In this document: positions 1-55,318 of the stretch, one piece after another
Layout: every line of letters starts with the position of its first letter
Position numbering within the stretch: position 1 is the first letter of the stretch
Virus record (IMG/VR): IMGVR_UViG_3300045970_000794
Location: 186,001-250,000 of that record
Length of the DNA: 64,000 nt
Reading direction: 5' to 3' (one strand)
The notes under the pieces: generated by a model
What the model was told of the DNA's origin: nothing
Database searches by the model: none
What the model saw: the letters and a program-made list of their open reading frames with translations, nothing else
Translations under genes and position numbers: made by a program

Positions 1-482
1 CTAATTGTTTTTTCACCATTAGATTCAGAACACATTGGGCATCCACGACCTTTTTTATGGTGATGTGGTATCTGTGTAAAATCACCATGTATTGGACATG
101 TGATGATTATTTTAGTCGTAGAATTAACATATATAACTTTTGAATAGTTATAAAAACCATTATGTATTTTTGATAATTCATTAATATATGATTCGGTCGT
201 TATTCTTGGTATTTTTAATTTGTATGCCTTTTCTTTAATGTCTTTAGCATCTCTTCTTAATTTTTCCCCACAATATTTACTACCAAAATTACTATAGTTT
301 TCTTTTAAAAATAAAATTTCATCAGTACCCCAAACATTTAAAATATTTAATCCTAATTTATTTGCTTTAACACGTATTGCATTTTTATTTCTATCTAAAA
401 ACGATGTACATCCAGCTACACCGTTAATCGGGTAGTTTTTGATTAATATATCAATTTCTTCATTAGTCCAATATGTGTTCAT
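1..482 (-). CDS. Putative mobile endonuclease with Zn-finger-like CPIHG..CPxC repeat and N-terminal helical repeats; 3' end beyond window
   Basis: Manual translation from ATG 482: MNTYWTNEEIDILIKNY...NYSKVIYVNSTTKIIITCPIHGDFTQIPHHHKKGRGCPMCSESNGEKT. Same repeat and SxGEK linker as 1874..2791; open to the window edge. Confidence 0.8.
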   Translation of the reverse strand, partial: MNTYWTNEEIDILIKNYPINGVAGCTSFLDRNKNAIRVKANKLGLNILNVWGTDEILFLKENYSNFGSKYCGEKLRRDAKDIKEKAYKLKIPRITTESYINELSKIHNGFYNYSKVIYVNSTTKIIITCPIHGDFTQIPHHHKKGRGCPMCSESNGEKTI

Positions 483-642
483 GTTTTATACCTATATTAA
501 TTTTTTCCCTTATTATTTCAGATAATTTAACTATTCTATTTTCTTCATTACTACGCTTAATCGTTAAATTAACCAATTGATTATAGATATTTTCATCTAT
601 TTTAATTGATATGTGTTTCAAATTCATTTTATTTCGTCCCAT
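463..642 (-). CDS. Small ribbon-helix-helix-like protein (59 aa), overlapping the nuclease start
   Basis: Manual translation MGRNKMNLKHISIKIDENIYNQLVNLTIKRSNEENRIVKLSEIIREKINIGIKHEHILD: alternating beta strand HISIKID, then two helices. ATATTTAT motif upstream at 664-671 (minus). Confidence 0.6.
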   Translation of the reverse strand: MGRNKMNLKHISIKIDENIYNQLVNLTIKRSNEENRIVKLSEIIREKINIGIKHEHILD

Positions 643-724
643 AATATATTGTATTACTTTATAATAAATATACGAATATTTAAAAAATTAGTTGCATTCA
701 GATATTTATTTAAAAAATAAAATT

Positions 725-1894
725 ATGGCTGCAAGTGAAATTGAGAAAACACGCTTATTTAGACAAGTTAGACATCAACTAGGTGCTCCAATGCGTAAAA
801 TTGAGTTACCAGACGAAAATTTAGTAACTTTATTGGAATTATCTATTGAAGATTACGCTGAATATGTACATAATTGGCTAATAGATAGTCAATGGTCATC
901 ATTTATAGGTCAACCTATTGATACTTTAGATATGGCATTCGCATTAACAACTAGAACATTAGATTTTGAGACACAATTTACTTATGCTTACTCAAAACAA
1001 GTTGGTTTACAAGCTAGAGGTCCATGGGAACTCAAAAAAGATTATGTTGAGATAGAAGCTGGTAGACAAGTTTATGAAATTCCAGCTGGTCGTGAGGTAA
1101 ATCAAGTATTATGGTTAACCCCATCGGTAACTAATCGTGCATTATTTGCTAATTTTGGTGGTTTTGATAACGGTATTGGTGGTGGTTACGCTCAAACTGG
1201 TTTTGGAGTCGGTGGTGGTGGTACTGGTGCTGGTTCTGGTGGTATGGGTGGAAGAGGTGGATATTATATCGCACCAGCATTTGATGTTTTATTGACTGCG
1301 GCCGATATGAATCTTAAACATAGATTATTAAGAAGTGATTTAGTATATAAAATAACCGCTGGGCCTAATGGTACTAAGTTATTACATTTAATTAGCACAC
1401 CAGGTTCTAAAATGACATTCGGTATGGGTGGTCAAGGTGGAAGTATGGCTGGTTCTAGTTCTTTAGGTATTGCTGGATGTCACGTATGGTATCATTATTA
1501 CGATACTAATGGTGATGTTGATGCATGTAGAGCGGCTAATTTAGATATTATTACGATGCCGAATGAAGTACCATTAACTAGATTAGATTTTGATGTGTTA
1601 AATGAACCTACAAAAATATTAATTCGTCAAATATTAACAGCTAGAGCTAAAATAACCTTAGGAAGAACTAGGGGTAAGTTTGGTGGTGTTGTTGGTCCAC
1701 CAGAAGCTGAAAGAACTATGGATTGGGAAAGTTTATTAACTGAAGGTAATGAAGAATATGGTAAAATATTTGAAAGATTAGCTGCTAGGTTAGAGCAAAT
1801 GACTAATACTAAAATGTTAGAGCGAAAAGCTAATGAAGCTGAAAACTTAAATAAAACATTAGCTTATAGACCCTTAGGATTTTACGTTATTTAG
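725..1894 (+). CDS. Neck/head-completion protein (T4 gp13-like)
   Basis: RHQLGAPMRKIELPDE N-terminus and GRTRGKFGGV C-terminal motif typical of gp13-like neck proteins. ATG 725 preferred to TTG 692 because it follows the ATATTTAT motif at 702. Confidence 0.7.
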   Translation: MAASEIEKTRLFRQVRHQLGAPMRKIELPDENLVTLLELSIEDYAEYVHNWLIDSQWSSFIGQPIDTLDMAFALTTRTLDFETQFTYAYSKQVGLQARGPWELKKDYVEIEAGRQVYEIPAGREVNQVLWLTPSVTNRALFANFGGFDNGIGGGYAQTGFGVGGGGTGAGSGGMGGRGGYYIAPAFDVLLTAADMNLKHRLLRSDLVYKITAGPNGTKLLHLISTPGSKMTFGMGGQGGSMAGSSSLGIAGCHVWYHYYDTNGDVDACRAANLDIITMPNEVPLTRLDFDVLNEPTKILIRQILTARAKITLGRTRGKFGGVVGPPEAERTMDWESLLTEGNEEYGKIFERLAARLEQMTNTKMLERKANEAENLNKTLAYRPLGFYVI

Positions 1895-2791
1895 TAATTT
1901 TTTTTCTAATTTTTTAATTATATCTTCATTATACCTAATAATAATTAAAGGGATGCTATTAATATAACAGTATCTCTTTTTTATTTTATCTCTTTTTCTA
2001 ATTGATTTTAGATTATCTAATCCACCCCAATATTTAATTGACCTATAATGTTGTTCACCATTATATTCGATACAAACATTATAATCTGGTAAATAAAAAT
2101 CAAATGGTAACATTATTTTATCTTTACAACCATTAAATCTATGCTGTGGTAAATATTTAATATTATTTATTAATAAAAATTCTCTAATAATTTTTTCACC
2201 CTTTGATGATTTACACTTAGAACACCCTTGACCTTTTAAATGATTACTAGGGGTTTGCTCAAATTCACCATGAATTGAACATATAATTTTAACTTTATTA
2301 TGTGCATTAATATAAATTACATTAGAATAATCATATTTATTTGTGTGAATTTCTAAAGATTTAGTTATGAATTTATCATTTTTAAACCTTTTACTATCAC
2401 CAACTGCTTTCCAACCACATTTTTGACAACCATAACTCTCCAAATGCCATTTAGCTTTTTGTTTAAATTCACCATGTATTGGGCATATTATATCTAAAAC
2501 ACTATGTTTATTTATATAATTAATGTTAGTATAATCGTATTTATTACCATGTTTTTGTTTTGCTTTAATTATAAATTCTTCATTAGTTAATTTTGAGTTT
2601 ATTTTACATTTTGGACATCCACTATTACTTCTTAGATGATTTCTTGGTTCCATTAAAAACTCACCATGTATTGGACATATTATGATTATGTTTTCGTATT
2701 GTGTTATATAATTAGCTTTTGAATAATCATATTTATCACCATGTTTTTGTACTGCTCGTTTAATAAAAATTTCTGTAGTTATCATATTCAT
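1874..2791 (-). CDS. Free-standing endonuclease: three Zn-finger-like repeats (YDYS..IICPIHGEF..GCxKC) plus C-terminal PD-(D/E)xK-like (Vsr/DUF559-type) domain
   Basis: Repeats visible in translation; C-terminal LPFDFYLPDYNVCIEYNGEQHY...RDKIKKRYC...IPLIIIRY. Confidence 0.8.
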   Translation of the reverse strand: MNMITTEIFIKRAVQKHGDKYDYSKANYITQYENIIIICPIHGEFLMEPRNHLRSNSGCPKCKINSKLTNEEFIIKAKQKHGNKYDYTNINYINKHSVLDIICPIHGEFKQKAKWHLESYGCQKCGWKAVGDSKRFKNDKFITKSLEIHTNKYDYSNVIYINAHNKVKIICSIHGEFEQTPSNHLKGQGCSKCKSSKGEKIIREFLLINNIKYLPQHRFNGCKDKIMLPFDFYLPDYNVCIEYNGEQHYRSIKYWGGLDNLKSIRKRDKIKKRYCYINSIPLIIIRYNEDIIKKLEKKLLNNVKS

Positions 2792-2831
2792 TTTATTATA
2801 AATATATTGAAATTAATAAAAGAAATTTTAA

Positions 2832-2870
2832 ACTATGAAATATCGTCCTATGGGATTCTATGTAATATAA
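2832..2870 (+). repeat. Orphan second copy of the neck gene 3' end
   Basis: Reads TMKYRPMGFYVI* versus TLAYRPLGFYVI* at 1856..1894; followed directly by a terminator. Confidence 0.85.
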
Positions 2871-2871
2871 A

Positions 2872-2901
2872 AAAAGCGGGCTAATACCCGCTTTATTTTT
2901 T
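2872..2901. terminator. Intrinsic terminator, probably bidirectional
   Basis: aaaaGCGGG-ctaata-CCCGCtttattttt between convergent genes. Confidence 0.75.
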
Positions 2902-2902
2902 A

Positions 2903-5900
2903 CTAGAAATTCCATTCATCATCGTCTTCGTTAAGAGTTATCTCAGCAACTTCTTGTATTGCTTCGACAATGACCTTTTCCTCTTCGTTAATGGACTGAT
3001 TTGGTTCTACTGATAGTACTGATTCATTTAATACTTTTTGTTGTTCTAAATGTTTTAACCAAAAGTCATAAGGTTTTTTAAGTTCATCATCATTAAGAGT
3101 CTCGTAAAATTCAGCTCTAGTTATGGCTTCATCCTCGTATTTAAATATATCATCTAGCTTACCGATTTCCTCATCGTATTTTTTAGATAGGAATATTAAT
3201 TCACCTTCTTCGTTAACACTTAAATACGCTATATTTACGTAGTTATTAATAACATCTATCGCAACATCATAATCAGAAGCTAATAATTCATTAATATTTT
3301 CTAATTGGTTAGCTTCAAGTCGTTTAATTAAATCATCAATTTTTTTACGTTCGAAAATAAGGTCACCTTCTTTCATTTTAGCTACTCTATCTAAATAGTC
3401 AGCTTTAATTCCTTCCCAATCTTCTAGCGAAACACCAATATCTTCTAGGTTATTTGGTGTTTTATTTACTTTAAGCCAAAATTTAATTTCTTTATCTTCG
3501 AAATTCATTAAATCTTTTTCGTAGTCATCTTGGTCGATTGGTTCATCTGGAATACCAGATACAAGTATACATTCTTCTTCGGTGAATATTTGAGGCTCCG
3601 CTAATGTCATTTTTTTAGTCTTCCTATCGGTTTTAGTTTCAACAAAAATCTTATCACGAATTTCTTTTTTGAATACAACCAATAATGGGGTTATTCGATT
3701 ATTAAATGCTGTTAAATACTTAGCCACATTATATTCTTCTGTGGTTAAATTGGAATCACTTTCAATATCCTCAGTTGGAATCAATTTACAATTTAATTTA
3801 ACGACACCTTTTTCAGTTTTAATATCACCATGTGATTTTTTTTCACCAGTATTAACATAGTAGATTACATCACCTAATTCAACTTTTAAATTATGTAAAA
3901 TTGCTAATTCCATATGTGCTTGCTTAGGCATTGGTTTACCAGCTTTATTAGTTTTTTTACATTTTTTCTTGTATTCATCAATACTAATCTTAACTTTAGA
4001 TTTTGATGCAATTTTAATTAAAGGAATTGAATAACTATAAATCATATCGACATATTTTTGATATAACTCAATAAATTCACTACCTTTATTATCCAATAAT
4101 AATACAATTGCTTCATCTAAAAATTCTTCAATGTATGTTGGCATTTTCTTAGATTTGATAGTATTACCAACCAATTTAATCTTAGTTTTACCTTTTTTGA
4201 TGATTTTATTAGCGTAATTCTTTCTAGCGAAATTAATAGTTGATTCACCGATTTCATCAATATCCAATCCCATTCTACCAATCATGTAAGTATCATTGAA
4301 TTCAGCAACTACAGCTTTTACACCGATATATTCTTTATCTTTTTCATTGAATGAATGTTTTCCATTTGAAATATACGTTATATTATCAATATCCAGTGGT
4401 ATTTCAAAGTTAAAACCATCGGTATTTTTAAGATTAATTAATCCAATTCCACCAATAAAAGTCCCATCATCAGTTGATATGTCATAAACAAAATTATTAA
4501 TATCTTTATTAGAAATTATTTCATTTTTCCAAACTTCATCAGACTTTTTTAATGTTTTTTTAGTAAAACTAGATAAATTACGATTATTATTTTTTAATGA
4601 AAATGAAATAAAATTTTGTTTATCTTTTCTGGTTTTAATTTTATACTCAATATTTAAATTTTTCATTAATAAACCAATACCAGCCATAGCAACTTGAGAC
4701 TTCATACCAATATCTGAACAAGTATCTATAGTATTTCCATAACCATCAGATGCACACACACCTTCTAAAAAATATTTTTTAATATCATTATTAGAATTTA
4801 AAATAATATTAGGTATTTTTTTCTCCCTGTAAGAAGTGTAAAAGTTTTCACAGAAAAATGTTGCGAATGTTGCATTGTGAACAACTAAATTATAGACACT
4901 ACTAGATTTTAAGTGGTTTTTTATTTCAGATTTAATTTTAAATTTAGTTTCTAAAATTAATTTTAATTTCTCCAAAAATTCTAAATTTGAATTGGATATC
5001 TTCCAGTCACTTCGTTTACCTTTATTAATATGTATTTCACCAGTTTTTTTGGACCTATATTTTTGCGTTCTTTTTGAACAATTAGCTGAACCATCACCCA
5101 AGAAAAAACCATATAACCAAGCCTCATCACTTGATATGCTATTTATTGAGTTAAAATCATTTAAATCATTACAAACATCAATCTTATCACCTCTTTTTAA
5201 TTTTGATGGTTTTATTTGAATATTATTCTGAAACAATGAATGGTCTTCAGTTACATTAACTAACCTATCTTTAGTGGTTATTCGGTGAATTGTTTTTTCA
5301 GTTTCATGTCTAAAAACATATTTAATATTTTTCCAACCATTTACAGTTAAAACTTCATATGGTTTAGCTTCAAAATCACGTAATTTATGAGAATCAATAT
5401 AGTTTGAATTTTCATTAAATAAATCACAAATTGGTAATATATCTAACATTCCATTTTTATATCTAATATAAACTGGTGTATCATATGTAACTGAATCACC
5501 CACAAGTGGTATAAAACCATATTTTTCAACAAAGAACTTAACCATAAGTCTTAAATACATTCTACCTCTACATGTTGTTTCTTCAGCCAAATCCATTTGT
5601 GACCATGGGAATACATCTGGCGCACCATAAGAACCGAAGAATGAGTTAGCAAGTATTTTAAGTGGTAATTGTTTTCTATCATAGAAACTACCAGTCTTCG
5701 TATCACCAAGACCATAAGCTTCATTCATCAAAGCTTTGTATTTATCACGATAATCAACAATATAGGTTAATAAACCTTTCATAACACCACTGATATCAAT
5801 ATCAGAGAATATATTCCAAGTTAATTGAGTTTTTGGGTAAAGAGCTGCATAATCGAGTTTTGAATATTTACCAGCTTTACCAACTCTAAGTAATCTTGAT

Positions 5901-7267
5901 AAACCACCAGTAAAATCACGTTTCTTATCAAATTCTGGAATAGCCAAATCATTTTCATATGACCAAGCTAACATTATCAACTTCCAAATGGTTGCAGTAC
6001 CCATGGTAAGGGTACGCATAAATGATGTTGGTAAAATTTTAGATAATAAGAATGATGCTTGATTAAAAATGAAACCTACTTGTTCGGTTTCCCATAAATC
6101 ATCTAAAAGATATCGTTCAGCAATATATTGCCCTGTAACAATTTCATATTCATCTTTAAGTGGTTTATTTTCAGTTATTTTATACCAATCACCATTGACA
6201 TCATTAAATGCATACTCATTTACTTTATCGGACCAAATAGTACCAATCATTCTACCATCATTAATATAAACACGATTTGGTTTATTAATTTCGGAAAATT
6301 TAGTAATATATTTTAATCCAGCTTTTTTAATATCAGAATTAATCGCTTGAGCTCTACGAACTGAATGATAAATGTCGGCAATGTTATATCCCCACATGTA
6401 TGTTTGTTCATAATATTCAGTATCACTACCTAATTTTAATGTTGATTGTTTACGTTTAATTTTAACATTAGGGTTTAATGTTTTTACCATTTTAGTAATA
6501 TCAACATTTAATAATCTACATCTTTCAAAGATATAGTACCAGTCAAATGTTTCTGAATTATAACCTTCAATAATATCTGGCTTTAATGCATCAATAATAC
6601 CAAAAAATGTTTCTAATGCTTGAACTTCTCTACTTAATCTATTTGGACCATCTTCAATTGTTAATATTGTCTCCCACCCACGATTATTTTTAATACCTAT
6701 TTGATTAATATGTGTATTATGTGGGTCTAAACCAGTTGTTTCTAAGTCGAACTGAAGTCTATGCAAATCATTATAATCATCAAATCCCTTGAATAATCGT
6801 TTACCAGATTGAATCATATATTGCTCAATTGGTGGTAATGTCATGAAATTCTTATTACCATTTATCTCACAACCAGCATCTTTAAAGAAATTTAATAATT
6901 GAAGGTAATTTTTGCTTCCAGTGATAAGGTATTTATATCCAGCGGCTAATCGTTGTGGTTCAGTACCTTCATCATTTTTAGTTTTAAGTAATTTAACTTT
7001 AATTTCAGCTTTACGCATTTCATTCTTCAACTTACCTCTATTTCCACCGTATAAATCATCCAATGCGGCTTCTTTCATCCAAAGGAATGGCTTATACTTT
7101 TCTTTTTTGACTATTTTAGTTGAAGTACCATAACCATTTGGTTGGTTAATTATTACTGAAACAGTTTCATCGTAATAATTAGCTTCAATTGCTGTAATGT
7201 ATTTTTGTGGGTCGTGACCATCGAAAAATTGTTCAATAGCCTCAGGTGTAACTTGTTTTTGCTCCAT
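2903..7267 (-). CDS. polB: Family B DNA polymerase containing an intein
   Basis: ExoI FDLETTG, ExoII GYNSETFDW, motif A DYAALYP, motif B KILANSFFG, motif C VGD|TDG split by intein, RKNYA. Likely start MEQKQ at 7267 (ORF track starts 7306). Confidence 0.95.
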   Translation of the reverse strand: MEQKQVTPEAIEQFFDGHDPQKYITAIEANYYDETVSVIINQPNGYGTSTKIVKKEKYKPFLWMKEAALDDLYGGNRGKLKNEMRKAEIKVKLLKTKNDEGTEPQRLAAGYKYLITGSKNYLQLLNFFKDAGCEINGNKNFMTLPPIEQYMIQSGKRLFKGFDDYNDLHRLQFDLETTGLDPHNTHINQIGIKNNRGWETILTIEDGPNRLSREVQALETFFGIIDALKPDIIEGYNSETFDWYYIFERCRLLNVDITKMVKTLNPNVKIKRKQSTLKLGSDTEYYEQTYMWGYNIADIYHSVRRAQAINSDIKKAGLKYITKFSEINKPNRVYINDGRMIGTIWSDKVNEYAFNDVNGDWYKITENKPLKDEYEIVTGQYIAERYLLDDLWETEQVGFIFNQASFLLSKILPTSFMRTLTMGTATIWKLIMLAWSYENDLAIPEFDKKRDFTGGLSRLLRVGKAGKYSKLDYAALYPKTQLTWNIFSDIDISGVMKGLLTYIVDYRDKYKALMNEAYGLGDTKTGSFYDRKQLPLKILANSFFGSYGAPDVFPWSQMDLAEETTCRGRMYLRLMVKFFVEKYGFIPLVGDSVTYDTPVYIRYKNGMLDILPICDLFNENSNYIDSHKLRDFEAKPYEVLTVNGWKNIKYVFRHETEKTIHRITTKDRLVNVTEDHSLFQNNIQIKPSKLKRGDKIDVCNDLNDFNSINSISSDEAWLYGFFLGDGSANCSKRTQKYRSKKTGEIHINKGKRSDWKISNSNLEFLEKLKLILETKFKIKSEIKNHLKSSSVYNLVVHNATFATFFCENFYTSYREKKIPNIILNSNNDIKKYFLEGVCASDGYGNTIDTCSDIGMKSQVAMAGIGLLMKNLNIEYKIKTRKDKQNFISFSLKNNNRNLSSFTKKTLKKSDEVWKNEIISNKDINNFVYDISTDDGTFIGGIGLINLKNTDGFNFEIPLDIDNITYISNGKHSFNEKDKEYIGVKAVVAEFNDTYMIGRMGLDIDEIGESTINFARKNYANKIIKKGKTKIKLVGNTIKSKKMPTYIEEFLDEAIVLLLDNKGSEFIELYQKYVDMIYSYSIPLIKIASKSKVKISIDEYKKKCKKTNKAGKPMPKQAHMELAILHNLKVELGDVIYYVNTGEKKSHGDIKTEKGVVKLNCKLIPTEDIESDSNLTTEEYNVAKYLTAFNNRITPLLVVFKKEIRDKIFVETKTDRKTKKMTLAEPQIFTEEECILVSGIPDEPIDQDDYEKDLMNFEDKEIKFWLKVNKTPNNLEDIGVSLEDWEGIKADYLDRVAKMKEGDLIFERKKIDDLIKRLEANQLENINELLASDYDVAIDVINNYVNIAYLSVNEEGELIFLSKKYDEEIGKLDDIFKYEDEAITRAEFYETLNDDELKKPYDFWLKHLEQQKVLNESVLSVEPNQSINEEEKVIVEAIQEVAEITLNEDDDEWNF
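4424..5494 (-). mobile_element. Intein (357 aa) with LAGLIDADG homing endonuclease in polymerase motif C
   Basis: Starts SVTYDTPVY after VGD; block B VTEDHSL; WLYGFFLGDGS and FLEGVCASDGY; ends VYDIST...INLKN before T(+1)DG. Confidence 0.92.
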
Positions 7268-7346
7268 ATGTATATAAAAAAATTCAGAAATAATGTAGAA
7301 ATACAAAATAACTTAATTTTTTCGTAAAAAGCAATAAAAAACGTAA

Positions 7347-54001: not shown

Positions 54002-55318
54002 ATGAAAAAATTAACAAATGAAGCGTTTTTTAAAGGAATAGAAAAAGAACATGGGGATAAATATGATTATTCTAAACTTGAGTATATAAATATGAGTACT
54101 AAAGTAACTATCATATGTCCAATACATGGCGAATTTAAGCAAAGACCACATAATCATGTAGAAGGTAAAGGGTGTCCTAAATGTGGATTTGATAGAACAA
54201 GAAATAGTAAAGTTAAAACAACTAATAAATTTATTGCACAAGCCAATGAAATTCACAATAATAAATATGATTATTCTAAAACCAATTATACAACTGGTAT
54301 TATAAAAGTAATTATTATATGTCCAATACACGGTGAATTTAAACAAGACCCATATAACCACCTACAAGGTAAGGGGTGCCCTAAATGTGGTAAAGTTTAT
54401 AAACCAACAACAGAAGAGTTCATTCAAAAAGTTAGGGGAGTTCATGGAGATAAATATGATTATTCTTTATTTAAATATGTTACCAGTTCAACAGCAAGTG
54501 AAATAATATGTCCAATACATGGAAAATTTAAACAAACACCACAAAACCACCTTAAAGGGAAAGGCTGTTTTAAATGTGGTAAAGCTTATGCTAGTAGGTA
54601 AAGAAGATATAAATTAGATGATGTTATTATTAAATTAAAAAATAAAGGGTTTTATGATGAATCATATAAATATGAAGAAATTTTATTTATAGATGGTGGG
54701 TCGAAAATGTTAATTACTAATAAATATACTAATACAAAACATATTACACCAGTACACAATATATTAAGACGAAAAACTAATTGTTGTTTTGATAATGCTA
54801 TTAATAAACAAGAATACCTTATTAGTATGAGTAATATTGTTCATGATAATAAATATAATTATTCTAAAGTTAATTATAAATCAGCTATATTTAAAATTAT
54901 AATTACATGTCCTACGCATGGTGATTTTAAACAAACTTTTAATTCACATTTAAGAGGTTCTGGGTGTCCTAGATGTTCTGATAGTAAAGGTGAGAAAAAA
55001 ATAAGAAAATTACTAAAGAGTAATGATATTATATTTATCCATCAATATAAATTTAATAATTGTAAGAATGTAAGACCTTTACCTTTTGATTTTTATTTAC
55101 CAGATTATAACGTGTGTATTGAATATAATGGAAAACAACATTATGAACCGATTAAACATTTTGGTGGTAAAAAACAATTAATTTATATACAAAAAAATGA
55201 TAAAATTAAACAAGAATTTTGTGAAAAAGAAGGTATTAAATTAATCACTGTAAAATATAATGAAGATATTGAAGAACGATTAACCGAAGAGTTAAAGAAT
55301 TTGAGTTCCTTTACTTAA
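54002..55318 (+). pseudogene. Zn-finger-repeat PD-(D/E)xK-like endonuclease interrupted by one in-frame TAA
   Basis: ORFs 54002..54601 and 54707..55318 are in one frame; only TAA 54599-54601 interrupts. C-terminus PFDFYLPDYNVCIEYNG matches 1874..2791. Confidence 0.8.

What the first reader, a model, noticed from the sequence alone, without database searches (positions are those of the whole stretch)
1856..2901. Neck-gene locus: nuclease overlaps the new end and the old end keeps the terminator
TLAYRPLGFYVI* versus TMKYRPMGFYVI*: 9 of 12 residues are identical and 7 of those 9 use different codons. The nuclease ORF ends inside the proximal copy (21-nt antisense overlap). Only the distal copy is followed by a hairpin, which suggests it is ancestral and places the breakpoint about 12 codons before the stop.
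Basis: partly seen in the sequence, partly recalled or inferred. Interest (0 to 1): 0.7.

Follow-up and report, generated by a model that had tools for sequence, protein, structure and literature searches.

The report
Homing nuclease carrying a spare gene end
A selfish nuclease gene sits inside the last dozen codons of a jumbo phage's neck-protein gene and keeps that gene whole by bringing its own recoded copy of the gene's end; this arrangement is known from organelle genomes but, as far as I could find, has not been described in phages.

Summary
The T4 gp13-like neck gene (725-1894, +) ends TLAYRPLGFYVI*. A second copy, TMKYRPMGFYVI*, lies at 2832-2870 behind an in-frame stop. It is followed by the only terminator hairpin of the region (2873-2894) and then by the stop of a convergent DNA polymerase gene. 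Between the copies lies a 305-aa homing endonuclease gene (1874-2791, minus strand). It has three zinc-finger repeats and a Vsr-like (EDxHD-type) nuclease domain. Its last six codons and stop are the antisense of the neck gene's new end.

The closest cassette-free relative (87% aa identity) ends AMKYRPMGFYVI*, then hairpin, then polymerase stop. That is colinear with the distal copy, so the distal copy is ancestral and the break lies 11 (at most 12) codons before the stop.

The same architecture recurs with a monophyletic nuclease lineage in five other distinct metagenomic phage sequences. A 26-codon variant occurs in two more. It also occurs at a DUF3228 gene in this same genome, and possibly at an AAA-ATPase gene elsewhere.

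Best reading: a free-standing homing endonuclease cassette inserted inside a coding sequence, carrying a surrogate C-terminus in place of a self-splicing intron or intein. Cleavage and homing are inferred, not shown. This is a new variant of a known kind.

The parts
725..1894 (+). Neck-protein gene (T4 gp13-like, 389 aa), intact, ending in the surrogate C-terminus
   Evidence: ORF listing. More than 2,600 homologues of 378-395 aa carry the precomputed family PF26809 Phage_T4_gp13. There is also a weak PHROG hit to head-tail adaptor.
1859..1894 (+). Surrogate (new) end of the neck gene: the last 11 codons LAYRPLGFYVI plus stop TAG. It is part of the mobile cassette.
   Evidence: It is 59% identical in nt to the orthologous end of relative L001, against 81% gene-wide. 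The 'LAYRP' spelling is found in none of the 120 best homologues. It overlaps the nuclease ORF's end.
1874..2791 (-). Homing endonuclease gene, 305 aa: three DUF723/CapR-type zinc-finger repeats plus a C-terminal Vsr-like (EDxHD-type) nuclease domain
   Evidence: Pfam DUF723 and PHROG endonuclease families, E = 6e-71. The AlphaFold model's best PDB matches are Vsr 1cw0 and the I-Bth0305I catalytic domain 3r3p, TM 0.75. D231 and H248 are invariant in 7 homologues.
1874..1894 (.). 21-nt tail-to-tail antisense overlap: the nuclease's LNNVKS* is read on the opposite strand of the neck gene's LGFYVI*
   Evidence: The equivalent overlap is 21 nt in L094, L061 and L070, 8 nt in L091/L093 and 36 nt in L090.
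2792..2834 (.). Right end of the cassette (nuclease upstream region), with a TATAAATAT-type motif at 2797-2805 and an A-rich ..AAAAGAAAT..TTTAAAC end shared with the other cassettes
   Evidence: Comparison of the regions beyond the nuclease start codon in six loci. Promoter function was not tested.
2835..2870 (+). Displaced remnant of the ancestral neck-gene end (MKYRPMGFYVI plus TAA). It is cut off from the gene by an in-frame stop at 2829-2831.
   Evidence: It is colinear with, and 82% identical to, the natural end of cassette-free relative L001, and 11 of 12 residues are the same. Its start codon is not conserved in other loci (CTT, TTA, CTC), so it is not a conserved small ORF.
2873..2894 (.). 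Bidirectional intrinsic-terminator hairpin shared by the neck gene and the convergent polymerase gene
   Evidence: The same GCGGG/CCCGC stem, with a different loop, is present in L001. Equivalent hairpins follow the remnant in L091, L093, L094, L095, L061 and L070.
2903..7306 (-). Convergent family-B DNA polymerase gene (context and right-hand homology arm). It carries a LAGLIDADG intein.
   Evidence: Relatives have polymerase genes of 1088-1136 aa at the same place.

Best explanation
A roughly 976-bp homing-endonuclease cassette (about 1859-2834) is inserted inside the neck-protein gene, between codons -12 and -11. The cassette has three parts: a surrogate copy of the gene's last 11 codons plus stop, an antisense-oriented nuclease gene whose own last six codons are written on the opposite strand of that surrogate end, and the nuclease's upstream region.

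The surrogate end is fused in frame to the truncated gene, so a full-length neck protein is still made. The original last 11 codons, the terminator hairpin and the polymerase gene are pushed 0.98 kb downstream.

Inferred mechanism: in a mixed infection the nuclease cuts cassette-free neck alleles at or near the -12/-11 junction. The break is then repaired from the cassette-bearing genome. The left homology arm is the body of the neck gene, and the right arm is the remnant plus hairpin plus polymerase end. This copies the cassette in.

The carrier allele would be protected in two ways. The site is split by 0.98 kb, and the surrogate end is recoded right at the junction (ATG AAA became TTA GCT).

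Functionally, the surrogate end does what self-splicing does for intron- or intein-borne nucleases: it lets the element live in a conserved coding target without killing the host gene.

Shown here: the architecture, which copy is ancestral, recurrence at a fixed junction, the sporadic distribution, and the nuclease family. Inferred: cleavage site, immunity, active homing, and antisense or terminator effects on expression.
For: (1) Anatomy and statistics of the two copies.

(2) The cassette-free relatives L001 and P0003 have the distal-type end, hairpin and polymerase stop with a 31-32-nt gap.

(3) The distal copy is 82% identical to L001's end and the proximal copy 59%, against 81% gene-wide. 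Identity over the last 60 nt is the lowest of the whole gene, and it is 92% just upstream.

(4) Between the two copies, 7 of 9 conserved residues use different codons. The baseline between orthologues is 36%, P = 0.013.

(5) The four closest nucleases (61-65% identical) and L095 (60%) all sit at the same place in other phages. All are antisense, all overlap the neck end, and all have an 11-codon remnant that starts at the same codon. A hairpin follows the remnant in L091/L092, L093, L094 and L095 but not in L090. These nucleases form a clade with SH-aLRT 99.

(6) A 26-codon variant with related nucleases is found in L061 and L070.

(7) Distribution is sporadic: 2 of 71 IMG/VR relatives with enough downstream DNA carry a nuclease there.

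(8) The same architecture occurs at a DUF3228 gene in the same genome. There the cassette-free relatives again end like the remnant (..TVK*), not like the new end (..TVL*).

(9) The nuclease has a Vsr/I-Bth0305I-like fold. Its invariant D231 and H248 are spaced 17 residues apart, like the catalytic D196 and H213 of I-Bth0305I, an enzyme that cuts immediately next to its insertion site.

(10) Both junctions are spanned by contigs from two samples.
Against: No cleavage, homing or expression data exist.

No nearly identical pair of cassette-bearing and cassette-free genomes was found; the best is about 83% nt. The exact left boundary and any co-conversion tract are therefore undefined.

In every one of 8 loci the surrogate and remnant share the same or nearly the same lineage-specific last two residues (VI/VI, LY/LY, IK/IK, VY/VY and so on). 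That is also what a local duplication would give. It needs donors to be close relatives or protein-level selection.

There is no consistent 'immune' versus 'sensitive' spelling across loci. LRYR is the surrogate in L091/L093 but the remnant in L094.

At the DUF3228 site the two copies are 23 of 24 nt identical. Recoding is therefore not obligatory, and immunity there must rest on the split site or on the last codons alone.

How the first such cassette arose is unexplained; it needs an illegitimate joining event.
Confidence: 0.75

Rival explanations
1. Local duplication first: the last 11-12 codons of the resident gene were duplicated in place, for example during imprecise break repair at the original insertion. 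The functional proximal copy then diverged. The new end is therefore not brought in by the cassette.
For: Surrogate and remnant share lineage-specific terminal residues in 8 of 8 loci. At the DUF3228 site the two copies are 23 of 24 nt identical. In L061 the last 16 codons of the copies are nearly identical.
Against: This would require the selected, functional copy to have changed far more (4 of 12 residues and most synonymous sites relative to L001) than the unselected remnant, which has 1 of 12 residues changed and 82% nt identity, equal to the gene average. The nuclease's own C-terminal codons are embedded in the proximal copy. The junction is fixed across a nuclease clade that lives in neck genes only 72-83% identical in DNA to their nearest cassette-free relatives. 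That fits inheritance with the cassette. The two models are not exclusive: the founding event may have been a duplication.
Confidence: 0.17
2. Dead relic: the nuclease is no longer mobile. The structure is a frozen scar, or the protein has been domesticated, for example as a regulator or for competition between phages.
For: There is no direct evidence of activity. The phage carries about 10 diverged paralogues at 42-54% identity, some visibly truncated, such as the 256-aa copy upstream of the neck gene. The deep divergence between the copies suggests an old insertion.
Against: The ORF is intact at full length. All residues invariant in 7 homologues are kept, including the putative catalytic D231 and H248. 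The distribution among relatives is sporadic (2 of 71), and the closest relatives lack the cassette. That is the pattern of an element still cycling.
Confidence: 0.06
3. Chance resemblance or metagenome mis-assembly.
For: The genome is a metagenome assembly, and AT-rich DNA yields many short ORFs.
Against: The genome-wide scan shows no other comparable match. The copy is colinear with relatives, including the hairpin. The same architecture appears in at least 8 independent assemblies. Both junctions are spanned without differences in two runs.
Confidence: 0.02

Closest known systems
EDxHD / Vsr-like homing endonucleases: I-Bth0305I of Bacillus phage 0305phi8-36 (PMC3239194), Hef of T-even phage U5 (PMC2988022), and the marine 'fractured gene' nucleases (PMC2677866)
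   Same: A C-terminal Vsr-like nuclease fold. Conserved Asp and His with the I-Bth0305I spacing. Modular N-terminal DNA-binding repeats. A phage host. Targeting of conserved, essential genes. I-Bth0305I cuts right next to its insertion site, as proposed here.
   Different: I-Bth0305I lives in a self-splicing group I intron, and the fractured-gene nucleases sit between split-intein halves. Here there is no intron or intein; a surrogate gene end takes that role. The DNA-binding modules are three DUF723/CapR-type zinc fingers, not NUMOD motifs. PDB sequence searches found no significant similarity; the link is by fold only.
Free-standing seg/mob endonucleases of T4 ('intronless homing', PMC2988022)
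   Same: A free-standing nuclease gene without an intron. It spreads, or is presumed to spread, by break repair using flanking homology. It is sporadic among relatives and sits next to essential genes.
   Different: According to the review, T4 seg/mob genes lie between genes and cut at a distance inside a neighbouring gene. Here the cassette lies inside the coding sequence, 11 codons before the stop. It replaces the gene's end and leaves the old end as a remnant.
Organellar endonuclease insertions that displace and replace a gene's 3' end. From my own knowledge, not read here: Allomyces macrogynus atp6, Paquin et al. 1994, and Ophiostoma rps3, Sethuraman et al. 2009. Read here: partial duplications of downstream exon sequence at atp6-173 and nad3-282, and rps3-LAGLIDADG fusions, in PMC12308204.
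   Same: An endonuclease element is inserted in the 3' coding region. The host reading frame is kept complete by a duplicated or foreign C-terminal segment, and the displaced original end is left downstream.
   Different: Those are LAGLIDADG or GIY-YIG enzymes in mitochondria, usually co-oriented and often fused in frame with the host gene. Here it is a Vsr-like enzyme in a phage, oriented antisense, with its own C-terminus overlapping the surrogate end and the terminator staying with the remnant.
Genes-in-pieces ribonucleotide reductase of phage Aeh1 (mobE insertion; cited in PMC2988022)
   Same: A free-standing nuclease gene inserted inside a phage coding sequence, with host function retained.
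   Different: There the host gene is split into two polypeptides that reassemble. Here the gene stays in one piece because the cassette supplies the missing end.

Membership tests
EDxHD / Vsr-like homing endonuclease family | C-terminal catalytic domain with the Vsr-type nuclease fold | tested here: met
   The best PDB matches of the AlphaFold model (mean pLDDT 76) are Vsr 1cw0_A and the I-Bth0305I catalytic domain 3r3p_A (prob 1.00, target TM 0.75, rmsd 3.1 A). E-values are weak (0.02-0.03) because the whole three-domain model was the query.
EDxHD / Vsr-like homing endonuclease family | Conserved catalytic Asp, His and Asp residues | tested here: inconclusive
   D231, E242, H248 and D268 are invariant in 7 homologues. 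The D231-H248 spacing of 17 equals that of D196-H213 in I-Bth0305I (text of PMC3239194). No residue-level alignment to the solved structure could be made, because sequence searches of the PDB were empty.
EDxHD / Vsr-like homing endonuclease family | Site-specific cleavage of the element-free allele near the insertion site | not testable with these tools
   Needs an in vitro cleavage assay.
Homing endonuclease gene (any family) | Presence/absence polymorphism at one fixed genomic site among related genomes | tested here: met
   The cassette is absent from the two closest relatives and from 69 of 71 IMG/VR relatives. It is present at the same codon in five other distinct sequences (L090, L091/L092, L093, L094, L095) with a monophyletic nuclease.
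T4-type free-standing (seg/mob) endonuclease cassette | Inserted in an intergenic region, leaving neighbouring coding sequences uninterrupted | tested here: not met
   The ancestral coding sequence is interrupted 11 codons before its stop, and the remnant lies 0.98 kb downstream.
Intron- or intein-borne homing endonuclease | The nuclease is embedded in a self-splicing RNA or protein element | tested here: not met
   The nuclease is on the opposite strand to the host gene, so it cannot be part of an intein or a host-gene intron ORF. The host ORF is closed by its own stop at 1892-1894. No Rfam scan for group I introns was run.
Phage T4 gp13 neck protein family (PF26809) | Sequence match to the family profile | tested here: inconclusive
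   The database's precomputed hits list PF26809 for the window's protein and all homologues, marked faint or weak in the contig tables. My own Pfam scan gave no hit. PHROGs gave only a weak head-tail adaptor match, E = 3e-5. The gene's position and size fit.
Intrinsic (rho-independent) terminator | G+C-rich hairpin followed by a T-run, placed after a stop codon | tested here: met
   The stem is AAAGCGGG/CCCGCTTT with A- and T-runs on both sides. The fold has z = -4.0. The stem is conserved in L001 while the loop differs. Termination in vivo was not tested.

The most novel reading that the evidence does not exclude
A lineage of Vsr-like homing endonucleases in jumbo phages has evolved a general 'bring your own C-terminus' way of life. 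The cassette carries a surrogate, often recoded, copy of the target gene's last 6-26 codons, interlocked antisense with the nuclease's own end. This lets a free-standing nuclease colonise conserved coding sequence without any splicing element. It has been used on at least two, perhaps three, different host genes (neck protein, DUF3228 protein, AAA ATPase). It would be a third solution to the homing-endonuclease 'do no harm' problem, beside introns and inteins, in viruses.
Probability: 0.5. Interest if true: 0.65.

Novelty: new variant of a known kind. Interest (0 to 1): 0.58.

Why it matters
Homing endonucleases prefer conserved targets inside essential genes. An insertion there is lethal unless the element splices out (intron, intein) or sits beside the gene and cuts from a distance (T4 seg/mob).

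This locus shows a further option in a phage: insert inside the gene and supply a replacement end. Three consequences follow.

- It explains short orphan 'pseudo-ends' and odd antisense overlaps that annotation pipelines will miss or mis-call.
- It gives a precise, testable prediction of the cleavage site, the -12/-11 codon junction of the neck gene.
- It provides natural examples of recoded immunity sequences that could inform how target specificity and self-protection co-evolve.

It also marks the neck-polymerase junction of these jumbo phages as a hot spot of selfish elements, with three endonuclease-type insertions within 7.5 kb.

Tried and rejected
- GenBank phage records hold no relative of the neck protein (tblastn). 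DNA search found only distant nuclease paralogues.
- Sequence searches of the PDB with the whole nuclease, with a 7-sequence profile and with the C-terminal 110 aa gave nothing usable. The family link rests on the fold search.
- A sliding-window comparison with L001 showed no co-conversion tract upstream of the last 45 nt or so. At 81% background identity the test is weak.
- No cassette-free partner closer than about 83% nt was found for any cassette-bearing locus.
- Laying contigs of two runs showed no form that skips the cassette. The joints seen lie inside the repeat-rich nuclease gene and come from paralogues. Contigs drop rare variants, so this says nothing about polymorphism.
- Apparent 'end duplications' at L154, L097/L098, L119 and L106 were rejected. 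The 'host ORFs' are 12-72 aa antisense frames of tandemly repeated nuclease genes.
- The idea that the remnant is a conserved mini-ORF (it starts with ATG in the window) was rejected, because the start is CTT, TTA or CTC in other loci.
- A consistent immune-versus-sensitive codon spelling across loci was looked for and not found.
- The TATAAATAT motif at the cassette's right end is only mildly enriched in the window: 30 matches against 18 +/- 4 expected. No promoter claim is made.
- The careful version of the nuclease tree did not finish in time, so the quick tree was used.
Full report
**Setting.** The window is bases 186001-250000 of a single 362,102-bp contig with 30% G+C. Its DNA is held almost word for word by contigs of two pond-metagenome runs. 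The neck-protein family has thousands of relatives in aquatic metagenomes, many on contigs of 300-380 kb, so this is an uncultured jumbo phage. No GenBank phage encodes a detectable relative of the neck protein.

**The observation.** The + strand ORF 725-1894 encodes a 389-aa protein. The protein database files it and all its homologues under PF26809, Phage_T4_gp13. It ends TLAYRPLGFYVI*.

At 2832-2870 the same frame type reads TMKYRPMGFYVI*, preceded by an in-frame stop. Codon by codon, 9 of 12 residues agree, 7 of those 9 use different codons, and 23 of 39 nt are identical.

A six-frame scan of the whole genome finds no other 12-mer with more than 7 matches.

The minus-strand ORF 1874-2791 (305 aa) overlaps the neck ORF by 21 nt. 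Its last codons, LNNVKS*, are the reverse complement of the neck gene's LGFYVI*, and its stop TAA is the antisense of the Leu codon TTA.

The only terminator-like hairpin between 400 and 3200 is at 2873-2894, on both strands. It lies between the distal stop and the stop of a convergent family-B DNA polymerase gene (2903-7306).

Contigs of two runs from different studies cross both junctions without a single difference. One of the runs may be the window's own source.

**What the nuclease is.** The protein has three repeats of a zinc-finger module (DUF723 / 'treble clef'). PMC10448857 describes this class as repeated DNA-binding domains of phage homing endonucleases. PHROG matches to endonuclease families reach E = 6e-71.

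An AlphaFold model built on seven homologues has mean pLDDT 76. Its best solved-structure matches are the Vsr endonuclease and the catalytic domain of the homing endonuclease I-Bth0305I (3r3p, target TM-score 0.75).

Asp231 and His248, invariant in all seven homologues, are 17 residues apart, like the catalytic Asp196 and His213 of I-Bth0305I. Sequence-only searches of the PDB were empty.

The genome holds about ten diverged paralogues, 42-54% identical.

**Which copy is ancestral.** The closest relative with DNA available is L001, with a neck protein 87% identical. It has no cassette. Its gene ends AMKYRPMGFYVI*, followed by a GCGGG-loop-CCCGC hairpin and, 32 nt after the stop, the end of the polymerase gene.

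The next relative (88%) has the same end and a 31-nt gap.

The window's distal copy, hairpin and polymerase end align base for base with this arrangement. Over the last 39 nt the distal copy is 82% identical to L001, the same as the 81% for the whole gene. The proximal copy is 59% identical. The last 60 nt are the least similar stretch of the entire gene, while the 60 nt before them are 92% identical.

Between the window and L001, 36% of conserved residues use different codons. Between the two copies the figure is 7 of 9 (binomial P = 0.013). The spelling LAYRP occurs in none of the 120 best homologues.

The distal copy is therefore the displaced original end, and the proximal copy is a newer, more foreign one.

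**The junction.** The right end of the cassette (..AAAAGAAAT..TTTAAAC) is shared with other cassettes and abuts the remnant directly at its first codon. The remnant is thus 11 codons, and the shared Thr at -12 is probably coincidental. The insertion is about 976 bp (1859-2834).

**Recurrence.** The four nucleases most similar to the window's (61-65% identical) were looked up on their contigs. All lie between the polymerase gene and a gp13-like gene. All are antisense to the neck gene and overlap its end, by 8, 21 or 36 nt. All have an 11-codon remnant that begins at the same codon. A hairpin follows the remnant in L091/L092, L093 and L094; L090 has no hairpin. A fifth distinct sequence (L095, 60%) came from IMG/VR.

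In a quick maximum-likelihood tree of 87 nucleases these six, including the window's, form a clade with SH-aLRT 99.

Two further loci (L061 and L070, nucleases 51-54% identical) have the same layout but a 26-codon remnant. They are the clade's nearest neighbours, together with L099.

Among 71 IMG/VR relatives with at least 1.1 kb downstream of the neck gene, only these two carry a nuclease there. Fixed site, monophyletic nuclease and sporadic occupancy are the signature of a homing element.

**Other host genes.** A screen of about 100 nuclease copies for stop-terminated peptides repeated on both sides gave background scores of 2-5 of 10.

Apart from the neck sites, one clear hit lies in the same genome. 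A DUF3228 gene (genome 336528-337334, minus strand) ends ..DFWSKNATVL*. An antisense nuclease (335438-336541) overlaps it. Beyond the nuclease lies ..SFWSKNATVK* plus a hairpin. Three cassette-free relatives end ..TVK*, again like the remnant. Here the copies are 23 of 24 nt identical.

L099 shows a possible third case at an AAA-ATPase gene (LGFKVS* against MGFKVN* plus hairpin).

Four other apparent hits were artefacts of tandem nuclease copies.

**Mechanism proposed.** The cassette is a free-standing homing endonuclease gene that lives inside a coding sequence. It supplies an in-frame replacement for the part of the gene it cuts off.

By analogy with I-Bth0305I, which cuts immediately beside its insertion site, I infer that the enzyme cuts cassette-free neck alleles at about the -12/-11 junction. 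The break would then be repaired from a carrier genome, using the neck-gene body as the left arm and the remnant, hairpin and polymerase end as the right arm.

This explains three observations:
- The remnant keeps looking like the resident lineage.
- The remnant's length is constant within a nuclease clade.
- The surrogate end is the more divergent copy.

Carrier immunity would come from the split site and from recoding at the junction (ATG AAA became TTA GCT).

Because no terminator follows the new stop, neck transcripts should run antisense through the nuclease gene to the old hairpin. This may restrain nuclease expression. That, like cleavage and homing, is inference.

**What does not fit neatly.** In all eight loci the surrogate and remnant share the lineage-specific last two residues or nearly so. 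This needs donors to be close relatives, or selection on the protein end, or a local-duplication origin.

No common 'immune' spelling exists: LRYR is the surrogate in two loci and the remnant in another. At the DUF3228 site the copies are hardly recoded.

The founding event that first joined a spare end to a nuclease gene is unexplained. I give the local-duplication rival 0.17.

**Comparison with what is known.** The enzyme belongs by fold to the Vsr-like (EDxHD) homing endonucleases. These are known from a phage recA intron (PMC3239194), from T-even phage U5 (Hef; PMC2988022) and from marine 'fractured genes' with split inteins (PMC2677866).

According to the review PMC2988022, free-standing T4 endonucleases sit between genes and cut at a distance. 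This one sits inside the gene.

Replacement of a displaced gene end by an endonuclease element is known from fungal mitochondria. Allomyces atp6 and Ophiostoma rps3 come from my own knowledge. Related duplications are noted in PMC12308204.

Full-text searches found no description of this arrangement in a phage, though most subscription journals are not covered. I therefore rate it a new variant of a known kind.

**Verdict.** Observation confirmed; interpretation supported and extended. Interest 0.58.

Noticed in passing
window 3-642 (genome 185712-186642): A second nuclease of the same family (256 aa, minus strand, running off the window start) and a 59-aa ORF are inserted between the conserved 96-aa ORF and the start of the neck gene. 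Relatives L001, L002 and P0003 have only about 70 nt there. The neck gene is thus flanked on both sides by endonuclease insertions. No duplicated gene end was detected at this one.
   Followed up: partly
window 2903-7306 (minus strand): The family-B DNA polymerase is 1467 aa, against 1088-1136 aa in relatives. It carries an insertion with a LAGLIDADG domain that splits the ..LVGD / TDGFNF.. polymerase motif, so it is most likely an intein with its own homing endonuclease. That makes three endonuclease-type elements within 7.5 kb.
   Followed up: partly
own genome G000:C1:335377-337334 (outside the window): A DUF3228 gene shows the same 'spare end' architecture. Its new end is ..DFWSKNATVL*. 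The nuclease (367 aa) is antisense and overlapping. The remnant is ..SFWSKNATVK* plus a hairpin. Cassette-free relatives end ..TVK*. The two copies are 23 of 24 nt identical, so this may be a younger insertion.
   Followed up: yes
L099 (IMG/VR 3300042541_002216), reverse strand around 1950-3260: An AAA-ATPase gene ends ..GGLGFKVS*. Beyond an antisense nuclease, which is the nearest neighbour of the neck-site clade, lies ..STMGFKVN* plus a hairpin. This is a possible third host gene with a 6-codon remnant, too short to be sure.
   Followed up: partly
whole genome; in the window also 54002-55300: About ten diverged paralogues of this zinc-finger/Vsr-like nuclease (42-54% identical) are scattered over the 362-kb genome. 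Some have extra DNA-binding repeats. Tandem arrays of three copies occur in a relative (L154).
   Followed up: partly
window 2797-2805, 663-671; cassette right ends in L061, L070, L090-L094: A TATAAATAT / AATAAATAT motif, which resembles the T4 late-promoter core, is conserved at the right end of the cassettes on the + strand. There it points at the remnant, not at the nuclease. It also lies upstream of the neck gene. In the window it is only mildly over-represented (30 against 18 +/- 4 expected). Its role is unknown.
   Followed up: partly
L030 and L033, 4001-4450: In two relatives a short extra ORF resembling the N-terminal roughly 130 residues of the neck protein lies immediately upstream of the full-length neck gene.
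   Followed up: no
window 700-730, 2780-2795: Neither the neck gene nor the nuclease gene has a recognisable Shine-Dalgarno sequence; the start codons sit in A/T-only context. This may hint at a host with weak Shine-Dalgarno usage. It was not analysed.
   Followed up: no
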